From: Podarcis bocagei
Taxonomy: Eukaryota
Length of the DNA stretch: 64,000 nucleotides
Strand: one strand, 5' to 3'
Assembly (NCBI GenBank): GCA_964188305.1
Contig: OZ076893.1
The notes beneath the pieces were generated by a model, which saw only the letters and a program-made list of their open reading frames with translations, ran no database searches and was not told the origin of the DNA. The position numbers and the translations under genes are program-made. Below, one piece after another: positions 58,201 to 61,200 of the stretch; position 1 is the stretch's first letter; every line of letters starts with the position of its first letter.

Positions 58201-61200
58201 CCGCATTTGTATGGACTCGATCATTTCGTGTGGCAGCGCCTAAACTTTGGAACTTCTTGCCCATTGAGATCATGCAGGCACCTTCACTGTACTTTTTTCA
58301 GTGACAGCTAAACACATTCTTGTTTAGGCAAGTCCACCCACATGCTTAGAAAGCTGAGGTTATATAAATCTGTTTTAGTATTTTAACTTTTCTTTGTTTT
58401 AAAAGTTTGGTGCTGTTTTTTTCCTTGGTATTACTATTTTATCTTCTGTGAACTGCTTTGAGGTTTTTTACAATCAAGAGGTGTATAAATTTTATGAAAT
58501 AAATACATACAATGAATAAAGGTAAAGGTAAAGGGACCCCTGACCATTAGGTCTAGTCATGGCCGACTCTGGGGTTGCAGCGCTCATCTTGCTTTACTGG
58601 CCAAGGGAGCCGGCGTACAGCTTCTGGGTCATGTGGCCAGCATGACTAAGCCGCTTCTGGCGAACCAGAGCAGCGCACGGAAATGCCATTTACCTTCCCG
58701 CCAGAGCAGTACCTATTTATCTACTTGCACTTTGACGTGCTTTTGAACTGCTAGGTTGGCAGGAGCAGCGACCGAGCAACGGGAGCTCACCCCGTCACAG
58801 GGATTCGAACTGCCGAACTTCTGATCAGCAAGCCCTGGGCTCTGTGGTTTAACCCACAGCGCCACCCGCGTCCAAATACAATGAATACAAGTGCTTATAA
58901 AAACTTAAGAAGGGTGCTTGCCATCTCACACATGGAATATGATGTCAGATAGGTCATGTGCACAGTATACATGTGTACTTCCTTGTTTCAAAAGTACACG
59001 TACACACACTCCTTCATAATCCTACACCTTAGGCACAGCAGAAATGTATGTACAGAATTCCCACAAGTGGGATTGAGTGGGCAGCACTAAAGCAGCTTAA
59101 CATCTAAAATTAAGTCAGAGTATTAGTTATAAACAGCTCCCTGTTACTGAATTGATGTTCTGCTTTCCTAGATAATTTTTACTTTTGCTCATTTATCTTC
59201 CTCCACAGTATTCTTGCCAATCAAAAGGCCTGAATTATCTGCGTGAAATAAAATATTCCTGACATGTTTAGCAGAGTTTAAGCAACAATACGAAAAGTCA
59301 CTTGAATTAATGAAGGAAGGATGCATAACAAAACCCTGTCAGCTTTACTAACTGTTGTGCTTCACATGGAACTTCACCTAGGCGTAAGGATGATGTTTCA
59401 TGGTAATAGCTACCCAAGTTAAGATATCAGCGTGAAATCTGGTTGGCCTACTTTGCTTATGGGTGTTCATCCTAGAGTTTCTGAGGAAGGCAAGTATGAT
59501 GGGTCAGCCAGAGAAGTTACTGAGCTTTTAACCTACTTGTTGTTTAGTCGTTTAGCTATTCTCACCTTATTTTGTAATGAGTTTTCATGTGCTCCTTTAG
59601 TTGGGAAGATGTTTCAACCTCTTTCTTACAGGTTTTACAGATATGGGTTTTGCCTCCAGACAATTCTTGACGGTGTTCTTCCATGTGTAAGGCCAGCTGG
59701 CTCTGCAAAGTAAACTCATCTCCACACTCTGAACATATAAGATTCTGCAAAGATAGTAAACTGGTTTGATTCTTTTCTAAAACAGCATAAAAATACATTA
59801 CTTTATAATAACATTTCATCACTTTAAGCATTTTCAATCCTTTGCTGGTAGAAAAACTGACTATAACAATCTGGGATCAGGGTCACACATACGTCAAAAA
59901 ATCCTTGGTGGAATTTATTAAGCATGACACCATTTGCAAGTCAAACAAAGAGTTCCCTACTCCCCTCCACATCTTTGTATTCTGTATGTGCTTCAAAAAT
60001 GACGATAATAGTCACCTCTTCCTTTTCATGAAGCATAATATGAGCTTTAAGACTAGCCACTTTATAATAACATTTCATCACTTTAAGCATTTTCAATCCT
60101 TTGCTGGTAGAAAAACTGACTATAACAATCTGGGATCAGGGTCACACATACGTCAAAAAATCCTTGGTGGAATTTATTAAGCATGACACCATTTGCAAGT
60201 CAAACAAAGAGTTCCCTACTCCCCTCCACATCTTTGTATTCTGTATGTGCTTCAAAAATGACGATAATAGTCACCTCTTCCTTTTCATGAAGCATAATAT
60301 GAGCTTTAAGACTAGCCACTCTAGAGAATTTTTTGTTGCACACAGGACAAGTAGGGTCTTCTCCATTGTGGGTACATTTATGCAGTGTAAGGTTGAACTC
60401 AACATTAAACGACATCGGACACTGGTCACATCGATGAGGCTGTTTGTGGAAAACAAAATCAAGGCAATATTTAAGCTTCATAATTCCATTGACAAGAAAA
60501 TATAAGAGACAGAGGTCACATCATTATGATTGTAAACCACCACAAAAACATCACTGGTTTAGTATATAAACTCCTTAAGTAAGTAACGAAGGCCAAATGA
60601 AATGGTGCCAGCTGCCAAAACAGTAAAACTTCAAATCTCTGCAATGGCCTTCCTTTCCTTTTCCACACCATATTACAGCATTTATTTACTATCTTTATAA
60701 AACCATCTTTATGCCAACACACCTTAAAACTTTCCCCACACAATGCACTTTTGGAGTGATAACTGAGATTTACACATTTCAGCTTTAAGAGAGGAAAGCA
60801 AACCTGAAACATTTCACTGGAAAATGACTGTTCCTTTACTTCTTCCCTTATTATGATCCTAGATTTTTAATTTGTGCAACAGAATTTTAAATATATTAAG
60901 ATCTTTTGTATTGCCTAAAACAGTGGCATTACAAAACAGGGCAGAATCACGATAAAGCTTGAACTTTTATATTGTTGTTTCCTAGATTATTAATAGATTT
61001 ATATATTCAGTGGCTCGAGTAAGCTGTTATGCCCCAAATACAGCCATTTCTTCCTAAGCTGGAAACAAGAATAGTGTCTTTCAAAATGTGATATATCTTA
61101 TATCTTCCTGGATATGCATATGACAAGAGGTAGGAAGGCTCCATGTTATTGAGCTTCCTCAAAATTAGGTTTACAAAGAACCCTGGAATTTGATTCATGA

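What the first reader, a model, noticed from the sequence alone, without database searches (positions are those of the whole stretch)
59800..60320. Perfect 259-bp tandem duplication copying the 3' end and donor of ZNF236 exon 3
Seen: two identical units with 3-bp ACT microhomology. The extra unit places the last 46 nt of exon 3 plus its GAG|gtgact donor at 60016-60061. The junction creates a new AG (ttataaag|TGGCTAG...) defining a 44-nt frameshifting pseudo-exon. Use of the second donor by exon 3 would instead add 259 nt containing a stop. Inference: either a very recent microhomology-mediated duplication creating a competing donor or poison exon in a conserved gene, or an assembly artefact.
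Basis: partly seen in the sequence, partly recalled or inferred. Interest (0 to 1): 0.7.

Follow-up and report, generated by a model that had tools for sequence, protein, structure and literature searches.

The report
Recent duplication doubles ZNF236 splice donor
One haplotype of a lacertid lizard carries a genuine, very young 259-bp head-to-tail duplication that gives the third coding exon of ZNF236 a second, identical splice donor; another individual and two sister species lack it, so it is an ordinary private structural variant whose effect on splicing is still untested.

Summary
Positions 59800-60058 and 60059-60317 are identical, and the ACT at 60318-60320 extends the match by 3 bp.

The gene is ZNF236 on the minus strand. 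Exon 3 (60439-60275) matches residues 67-121 of a named ZNF236-like protein, and exon 4 (59744-59566) continues at residue 122.

The ancestral intron 3 is only 271 nt, and the duplication copies 213 nt of it plus the last 46 nt of exon 3. The second donor therefore sits in front of an exact copy of the old intron.

Public contigs argue against an assembly artefact:
- In the best-matching sample, probably the reference animal, the k=31 contigs break exactly 30 nt inside each end of the repeat.
- The repeat has about 1.7-1.8 times the flank depth.
- Only this run has depth over the junction, at about 0.6 of the flank. A heterozygous duplication fits best.

A second individual of the same species and two related species each have one contig running through a single copy.

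So this is a recent, polymorphic tandem duplication with short microhomology, a known kind of mutation. Use of the second donor would add 259 nt and a stop codon after 24 codons. The 44-nt pseudo-exon is unlikely. No RNA was available.

The parts
59800..60058 (.). Repeat copy 1. On the minus strand this is the downstream copy. It holds the 46-nt copy of the exon-3 tail, the second donor and 213 nt of intron 3.
   Evidence: 100% identical to 60059-60317.
60059..60317 (.). Repeat copy 2. On the minus strand this is the upstream copy. It holds the real exon-3 tail, the first donor and 213 nt of intron.
60318..60320 (.). Third ACT. ACT also stands at 59800-59802 and 60059-60061. This is the 3-bp microhomology at the breakpoints.
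   Evidence: The period-259 identity spans 521 nt, which is 2 x 259 + 3.
60275..60439 (-). ZNF236 third coding exon: 165 nt, 55 codons, two C2H2 fingers.
   Evidence: Translation. Pfam zf-C2H2, E = 3.5e-10. 93% identity to residues 67-121 of a 'zinc finger protein 236-like' protein. A spliced contig from a relative ends the exon at the same base.
60269..60277 (-). Donor D1, GAG|gtgact. This is the native position and it keeps the whole native exon upstream.
60016..60061 (-). Copy of the last 46 nt of exon 3, now lying inside the intron.
   Evidence: tblastn finds the extra weak hit at 60069-60007.
60010..60018 (-). Donor D2, an identical GAG|gtgact. It is the intron-proximal donor, 271 nt from the exon-4 acceptor.
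60060..60061 (-). AG at the copy junction. Its polypyrimidine tract is weak.
   Evidence: Pyrimidine fraction at -20..-3 is 0.39, against 0.67 and 0.72 for the exon-3 and exon-4 acceptors.
59745..60015 (-). A 271-nt stretch equal in sequence and length to the ancestral intron 3, running from D2 to the exon-4 acceptor. The intron from D1 is 530 nt.
   Evidence: In the single-copy contigs of X3, X4 and X10 this is the only intron present.
59566..59744 (-). ZNF236 next exon (exon 4), 179 nt.
   Evidence: 71% identity to residues 122-180 of the same ZNF236-like protein, directly continuing exon 3. Pfam zf-C2H2.
60200..60202 (-). TGA reached 24 codons after exon 3 if D2 is used in place of D1.
61280..61427 (-). 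Preceding coding exon, roughly residues 19/20-66. Its acceptor is ...ttttgtag and its donor is AAG|gtgagt.
   Evidence: tblastn and the in-frame reading.

Best explanation
This is a genuine, very recent germline tandem duplication of 259 bp. It arose on one haplotype of a lacertid lizard, between two ACT triplets 259 bp apart. The assembly represents that haplotype, and the sequenced animal most likely carries the duplication on one of its two chromosomes. The rest of the sampled species and its sister species keep the single-copy state.

Mechanism (inferred): a replication or repair slip that re-annealed on 3 bp of microhomology, producing a microhomology-associated tandem duplication.

Consequence (inferred from sequence only): ZNF236 pre-mRNA from this allele has two identical, moderately weak donors, GAG|gtgact. 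D1 keeps the native exon upstream. D2 keeps the native 271-nt intron downstream. Splicing from D1 removes the whole insertion and gives normal mRNA. Splicing from D2 lengthens exon 3 by 259 nt and shifts the frame. A stop follows after 24 codons, so that mRNA should be a target of nonsense-mediated decay. The allele is therefore somewhere between silent and a partial or full loss-of-function allele. I expect a mixed outcome with substantial use of D2.
For: Shown:
- The two copies are perfectly identical and carry the 3-bp extension.
- In run X1 (same species, closest to the window at 0.25 differences per 100 nt), the k=31 contigs end at 59829 and begin at 60291. These are exactly k-1 = 30 nt inside the two repeat ends, as expected if the first repeat word has two predecessors and the last has two successors.
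- In X1 the repeat contigs have depth 149 and 163 against 87 and 91 in the flanks. Three contigs fit two places in X1, against none in the other runs.
- The junction bin 60015-60115 has depth 31 in X1 that no listed contig explains, about 55 over the 57-nt junction unitig. It is 0 in X3 and X10, and in X4 it is fully explained by that run's single-copy contig.
- X3 (same species, another sample), X4 and X10 (sister species) each have one contig crossing the locus with one unit missing: 59896 to 60155, 59799 to 60059 and 59944 to 60206.
- Gene and exon borders hold.

Established knowledge:
- With two 5' splice sites, the intron-proximal one is used whenever it is bound by U1 (PMC3413131).
- Tandem duplications with microhomology arms of 3 bp or more are a common, conserved and often private class of variant (PMC13167724, PMC8639346).
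Against: - The junction contig of X1 was not printed, because a high-copy repeat at 58500-58900 filled the tables. Its presence is inferred from the break points and from depth book-keeping.
- The ratio of junction to flank depth (0.55-0.62) and of repeat to flank depth (1.5-1.8) lies between the heterozygous and homozygous expectations.
- X1 is not proven to be the animal that was assembled. If it is, it may be the very reads used, so agreement excludes an assembler error but is not an independent individual.
- Only one other conspecific was examined.
- Contigs drop rare variants.
- Three bp of microhomology is weak evidence for any particular mechanism.
- No RNA of this species was available, so every statement on splicing is inference.
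- The donor lacks +5G, so rules derived from strong sites may not transfer.
Confidence: 0.8

Rival explanations
1. Assembly artefact. Two overlapping pieces were butt-joined, or a consensus step doubled 259 bp. The animal would then have one copy like all the others.
For: The copies are perfectly identical. The duplication is absent from three other runs. The window differs from all four runs at 60950 and 60964, which could hint at local consensus trouble.
Against: X1's independently built k=31 contigs break exactly at the two nodes that a tandem junction creates. The repeat is 1.7-1.8 times deeper than the flanks. Only X1 has depth in the junction bin. There is no N or gap nearby. A butt-join would leave no junction words in the reads.
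Confidence: 0.08
2. The duplication is real but homozygous in X1, or X1 is a second animal that also carries it. It would then be a common polymorphism, or fixed in one population, rather than a private heterozygous variant.
For: The second repeat contig has 1.84 times the flank depth, close to 2. X1 contigs differ from the window at 7 sites, so X1 need not be the assembled animal.
Against: Junction depth is about 55 against a flank of 87-91. The first repeat contig is at 1.5-1.7 times the flank. A least-squares comparison favours the heterozygous model, and the 7 differences are what popped heterozygous bubbles would give. The other conspecific, X3, lacks the duplication.
Confidence: 0.25
3. 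The duplication is real but functionally silent. D1, backed by the full native exon and exon definition, is used essentially always. The 259 extra bases are simply removed with a 530-nt intron.
For: D2 keeps only 46 nt of exon sequence upstream. A D2-defined exon would be 424 nt. The carrier is presumably a viable wild animal, and ZNF236 exon 3 is deeply conserved (93% to rodents, 75% to a scorpion protein).
Against: The donors and 213 nt downstream of each are identical. D2 is the intron-proximal site in front of the intact native intron. Proximal sites win when bound, and an upstream competitor can even speed proximal splicing (PMC3413131 and the work it cites). Heterozygosity would mask a loss of function.
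Confidence: 0.35

Closest known systems
Microhomology-mediated tandem duplications (MTDs; PMC8639346, PMC13167724)
   Same: A single-copy segment flanked by short identical arms becomes two perfect head-to-tail copies. The variant is polymorphic or private, and the ancestral single-copy allele is still present in the population. It is expected to be reversible.
   Different: The arm is only 3 bp, which is the bottom of the range. The cited pipeline predicts candidate sites from arms of 4-25 bp. The unit is long at 259 bp. The formation pathway (Okazaki-flap annealing, template switch or end joining) cannot be told from the sequence.
Engineered pre-mRNAs with duplicated 5' splice sites (Reed and Maniatis 1986 and Eperon-lab constructs, as cited and extended in PMC3413131)
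   Same: Two identical donors in cis, a few hundred nt apart, compete for one acceptor. The upstream one keeps the exon context and the downstream one is intron-proximal.
   Different: This is a natural allele in a chromosomal gene with a weak-to-moderate donor (no +5G). It sits in vivo between a long upstream intron and a very short downstream intron. No splicing data exist for it.
Intron or alternative splice-site birth by tandem duplication (the Rogers model; cited from my own knowledge, not checked here)
   Same: A tandem duplication supplies an extra splice signal without changing the coding sequence, provided the outer sites are used.
   Different: No new intron is created here. An existing donor and most of an existing intron are doubled.
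Poison exons and NMD-coupled unproductive splicing
   Same: The alternative products (+259 nt or +44 nt) shift the frame and carry an early stop far upstream of the last exon junction.
   Different: Regulated poison exons are conserved. This element is absent from a conspecific and from sister species, and its inclusion in RNA has not been shown.
False duplications in genome assemblies
   Same: A perfect, adjacent copy seen in one assembly only.
   Different: The junction leaves its signature in independently built contigs of the best-matching sample. There is no gap or contig end beside it.

Membership tests
Microhomology-mediated tandem duplication | Two head-to-tail copies, identical or nearly so | tested here: met
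   259 nt x 2, 100% identity, no indels.
Microhomology-mediated tandem duplication | Short identical arms at both ends of the ancestral single-copy segment | tested here: met
   ACT at 59800, 60059 and 60318, and the identity runs 2 x 259 + 3. It is only 3 bp, with a chance expectation of 1.6-5% (PMC13167724).
Microhomology-mediated tandem duplication | The single-copy ancestral allele exists in relatives or the population | tested here: met
   Contigs of X3, X4 and X10 cross the locus with one unit.
Microhomology-mediated tandem duplication | Formation by annealing on the microhomology during replication or repair | not testable with these tools
   Sequence alone cannot separate flap annealing, template switching and end joining.
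ZNF236 orthologue | Sequence match to proteins named ZNF236, collinear over successive exons | tested here: met
   Four successive window exons match residues 19-66, 67-121, 122-181 and 178-226 of 'zinc finger protein 236-like' (Urocitellus). A Coregonus entry of the same name also matches.
ZNF236 orthologue | Full-length architecture (about 30 C2H2 fingers spread over many small exons) and conserved neighbours | tested here: inconclusive
   Many small finger-bearing exons lie on the minus strand of the window.
Poison exon / NMD-coupled alternative 5' splice site | The alternative form is present in RNA | not testable with these tools
Poison exon / NMD-coupled alternative 5' splice site | Premature stop upstream of later exon junctions | tested here: met
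   A stop follows 24 codons after exon 3 with D2. With the 44-nt insert the stop falls in exon 4.
Poison exon / NMD-coupled alternative 5' splice site | Evolutionary conservation of the element | tested here: not met
   Absent from a conspecific and two sister species, and from a more distant squamate contig.
Assembly false duplication | Junction not supported by reads of the assembled sample | tested here: not met
   X1 contigs break at 59829 and 60291, the repeat is at 1.7-1.8 times flank depth, and junction-bin depth is seen only in X1. The junction contig itself was inferred, not displayed.
Assembly false duplication | Lies at a gap, scaffold join or contig end | tested here: not met
   No N anywhere in the 64-kb window.

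The most novel reading that the evidence does not exclude
The allele is a natural version of the classic duplicated-donor experiment. The intron-proximal copy D2 would win most of the time, so a healthy wild lizard is heterozygous for a near-null allele of the deeply conserved ZNF236. Alternatively, this is the first step in the birth of an NMD-coupled alternative 5' splice site.
Probability: 0.3. Interest if true: 0.45.

Novelty: new member of a known kind. Interest (0 to 1): 0.25.

Why it matters
For the assembly, it means this repeat should not be 'corrected' away. It is most likely a true heterozygous structural variant of the reference animal, and an annotation pipeline may mis-model ZNF236 exon 3 because of it.

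For biology, it is a clean natural example of how a small tandem duplication across an exon-intron border creates two equivalent donors, each keeping half of the native context. It could be used to test proximity against exon context in donor choice in vivo. Beyond that it is one of many private structural variants, and nothing suggests it has been selected.

Tried and rejected
- Exact look-ups of the exon-3 open frame and of the 51-aa frame that spans the junction found nothing in the public gene-position index. This is expected, because contigs break at the repeat.
- The exon-3-only protein search gave 28 hits but no ZNF236 name. The name came only after searching with a returned 153-aa N-terminal protein.
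- Rfam at relaxed threshold and a tRNA scan around the locus and the neighbouring high-copy repeat found nothing.
- The reads call included the high-copy repeat at 58500-58900, which filled the joint and loose-end tables.
- I rejected a dispersed second copy elsewhere in the genome as the cause of X1's break points. The break points coincide to the base with the tandem junction, and only X1 has depth in the junction bin.
- I rejected the 44-nt pseudo-exon as the main outcome because its acceptor is poor and the exon is under 50 nt.
Exons were searched by reference one at a time. Exons were concatenated only inside a local script to read frames.
- The spliced contig L002 comes from an organism I did not determine, probably a mammal. 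I used it once for the exon border and did not pursue it.

Full report
**The observation.** Positions 59800-60058 and 60059-60317 are identical over all 259 nt. Tandem Repeats Finder gives period 259, 2.0 copies, 100% matches and no indels, and the repeat finder agrees. A script shows that the period-259 identity runs from exactly 59800 to 60320. That is 521 nt, or two units plus one more ACT, so ACT stands at 59800, 60059 and 60318. The unit occurs nowhere else in the window, the junction 31-mer (60044-60074) is unique, and the window has no N. The repeat cannot be a chance match. The 3-bp extension alone would occur by chance in about 1.6% (one-sided) to 5% (two-sided) of duplications (PMC13167724).

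**The gene.** On the minus strand, 60439-60275 is an open 165-nt exon coding 55 residues with two C2H2 fingers. It is bounded by ...aaacag| and GAG|gtgact. An exon-only search found deeply conserved relatives (93% identity in a rodent, 75% in a scorpion) but no informative name. A returned 153-aa N-terminal protein (P0004) then retrieved entries named 'zinc finger protein 236-like' from Urocitellus parryii and Coregonus clupeaformis.

The window's exon aligns to residues 67-121 of the Urocitellus protein at 93% identity. The next open exon, 59744-59566, aligns to residues 122-180 at 71%, with no gap between them. tblastn places residues 19-66 at 61423-61280 and residues 178-226 at 57555-57409. 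The first ~19 residues must lie in a further upstream exon, so 'exon 3' is at least the third coding exon. A spliced contig from an undetermined relative joins the two exons at the same bases. I sent no joined exon model to any search tool. Exons were concatenated only in a local script to read frames.

Exon 4 begins only 55 nt beyond the repeat. The ancestral intron 3 is therefore 271 nt, and the duplicated unit is the last 46 nt of exon 3 plus the first 213 nt of that intron. After the duplication, the first donor D1 (60274) keeps the entire native exon upstream but faces a 530-nt intron. The second donor D2 (60015) has only 46 nt of exon sequence upstream but is followed by the ancestral 271-nt intron, letter for letter.

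**Real or artefact.** One run search listed 20 holders in 10 studies. The best are X1 and X2 (organism A, one sample). X3 is another sample of organism A. Organisms B to F hold progressively fewer words. I laid Logan contigs of X1, X3, X4 (organism B) and X10 (organism F) on 58500-61500. Their substitution differences from the window are 0.25, 0.78, 1.12 and 1.98 per 100 nt.

X3, X4 and X10 each have a single contig that crosses the locus with one unit missing. The record positions are consecutive while the window position jumps from 59896 to 60155, from 59799 to 60059 and from 59944 to 60206. None of their contigs fits two places.

X1 is different:
- Its contigs are 58994-59829 (depth 87), 59800-59904 (depth 149), 60134-60320 (depth 163) and 60291-61444 (depth 91).
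- The ends at 59829 and 60291 are exactly k-1 = 30 nt inside the two repeat boundaries. A k=31 graph breaks there if the first repeat word has two predecessors (left flank and junction) and the last has two successors (junction and right flank).
- Three X1 contigs fit two places.
- Depth book-keeping reproduces every bin in 59813-59913 and 60116-60418 from the listed contigs. Bin 60015-60115 is not explained by any listed contig and holds 3131 depth-letters. That is about 55 over the 57-nt junction unitig. Bin 59712-59812 also holds an unexplained residue (see 'Left unexplained').
- The junction bin is empty in X3 and X10. In X4 it is fully explained by that run's single-copy contig.

I conclude that the junction is present in X1's reads, so the duplication is not an assembler artefact such as a butt-joined overlap. 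One caveat applies. The junction contig itself was not printed, because a repeat at 58500-58900 with k-mer depth in the millions filled the tables, and the call cannot be repeated.

**Zygosity and age.** Junction to flank is 0.55-0.62 and repeat to flank is 1.5-1.8, depending on how far heterozygous sites depress the mean flank depth. This fits a heterozygote (0.5 and 1.5) better than a homozygote (1 and 2), but not decisively. X1's contigs differ from the window at seven sites. At several of these X1 shares the allele of the other runs. This is what popped heterozygous bubbles of the assembled animal would give. I put about two to one on 'heterozygous in the reference animal'.

Zero differences between the copies bound the age only loosely, at under roughly 1-6 million years for 1-5e-9 substitutions per site per year. 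Absence from a conspecific makes the duplication a segregating or private variant and so far younger. Earlier notes of this scan call the genome a lacertid lizard. I did not test that. The run pattern, and a Bov-B-like repeat end that I recognise from memory, are compatible with it.

**Mechanism.** A tandem duplication bounded by 3 bp of microhomology belongs to the class described as microhomology-mediated tandem duplication. That class is widespread, mostly neutral, often private and reversible (PMC8639346, PMC13167724). Three base pairs is the low end, and end joining with incidental microhomology cannot be excluded. The pathway is inferred, not shown.

**Consequences (inference only).**
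- D1 to exon 4 gives normal mRNA, because the insertion leaves with the intron.
- D2 to exon 4 lengthens exon 3 by 259 nt (mod 3 = 1). A TGA follows after 24 codons at 60202-60200, far upstream of later junctions, so the product should be degraded by nonsense-mediated decay.
- The 44-nt pseudo-exon needs the junction AG as acceptor. Its -20..-3 tract is 39% pyrimidine against 67% and 72% for the exon-3 and exon-4 acceptors. It has T at +1, and the exon would be under 50 nt. I consider it unlikely.

In vitro work on duplicated donors shows that both sites can be occupied by U1 and that the intron-proximal one is used whenever it is bound. The distal site is used when the proximal one is weak (PMC3413131 and the studies it cites). 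Here the two donors are identical and only moderate, with G at -3 and C at +5. D2 is proximal with the native intron, and D1 has the native exon. I therefore expect a mixture with substantial D2 use, but a silent outcome keeps about one chance in three. No RNA run of this species was listed.

**Verdict.** This is a new instance of a known kind of variant, of modest interest. It matters mainly for annotating ZNF236 in this assembly and as a possible natural test of donor choice.

**Left unexplained.**
- X1's repeat is split into two contigs overlapping at unit positions 76-105, with a depth step from 149 to 163.
- About 3250 depth-letters in bin 59712-59812 are not accounted for by any listed contig.

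Noticed in passing
window 58500-58900: Extremely high-copy repeat. Summed k-mer depth is 1-18 million in all four lizard runs, with many internal joints. There is no tRNA or Rfam hit, so it is probably a SINE-like element.
   Followed up: partly
window 59510-59610: A short piece of another high-copy element, with depth about 20 times the flank. In three of the runs (X3, X4 and X10) contigs run on from 59555 into a shared consensus beginning TCGTGTCCGA..., which from memory resembles the Bov-B LINE tail. It lies just beyond the exon-4 donor.
   Followed up: no
window 56734-57307: GC-rich island inside ZNF236, just downstream of the exon at 57555-57409. The 2-kb bin has GC 0.48 against about 0.38 around it, with long GC-rich open frames on both strands. 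It could be an internal promoter or CpG island.
   Followed up: no
window 59875-59905 and 60134-60164 (unit positions 76-105): In run X1 the repeat is split into two contigs that overlap by 30 nt here, with depth stepping from 149 to 163. This implies an extra branch of depth about 14 entering mid-unit. The cause is unknown.
   Followed up: no
window 59712-59812: Run X1 has about 3250 depth-letters more than the listed contigs explain. This could be a contig of the other (single-copy) haplotype carrying a variant close to the left breakpoint.
   Followed up: no
window 60950 and 60964: The window has C at both sites, whereas all four runs, including the best holder, have T. These are either private alleles of the duplicated haplotype or consensus errors.
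   Followed up: no
L001:3139-3726: In a more distant squamate contig (83-87% identity), intron 3 is about 587 nt rather than 271 nt and holds one copy of the exon tail. The intron length is therefore labile in this lineage.
   Followed up: partly
same genome, other pieces (notes s1-359677, s1-349718, s1-354262): Earlier first-reader notes list other small tandem duplications that double splice donors in this assembly (MKNK1, an exon-12 donor, DPYSL3). Whether these are real variants or a systematic assembly feature was not checked.
   Followed up: no
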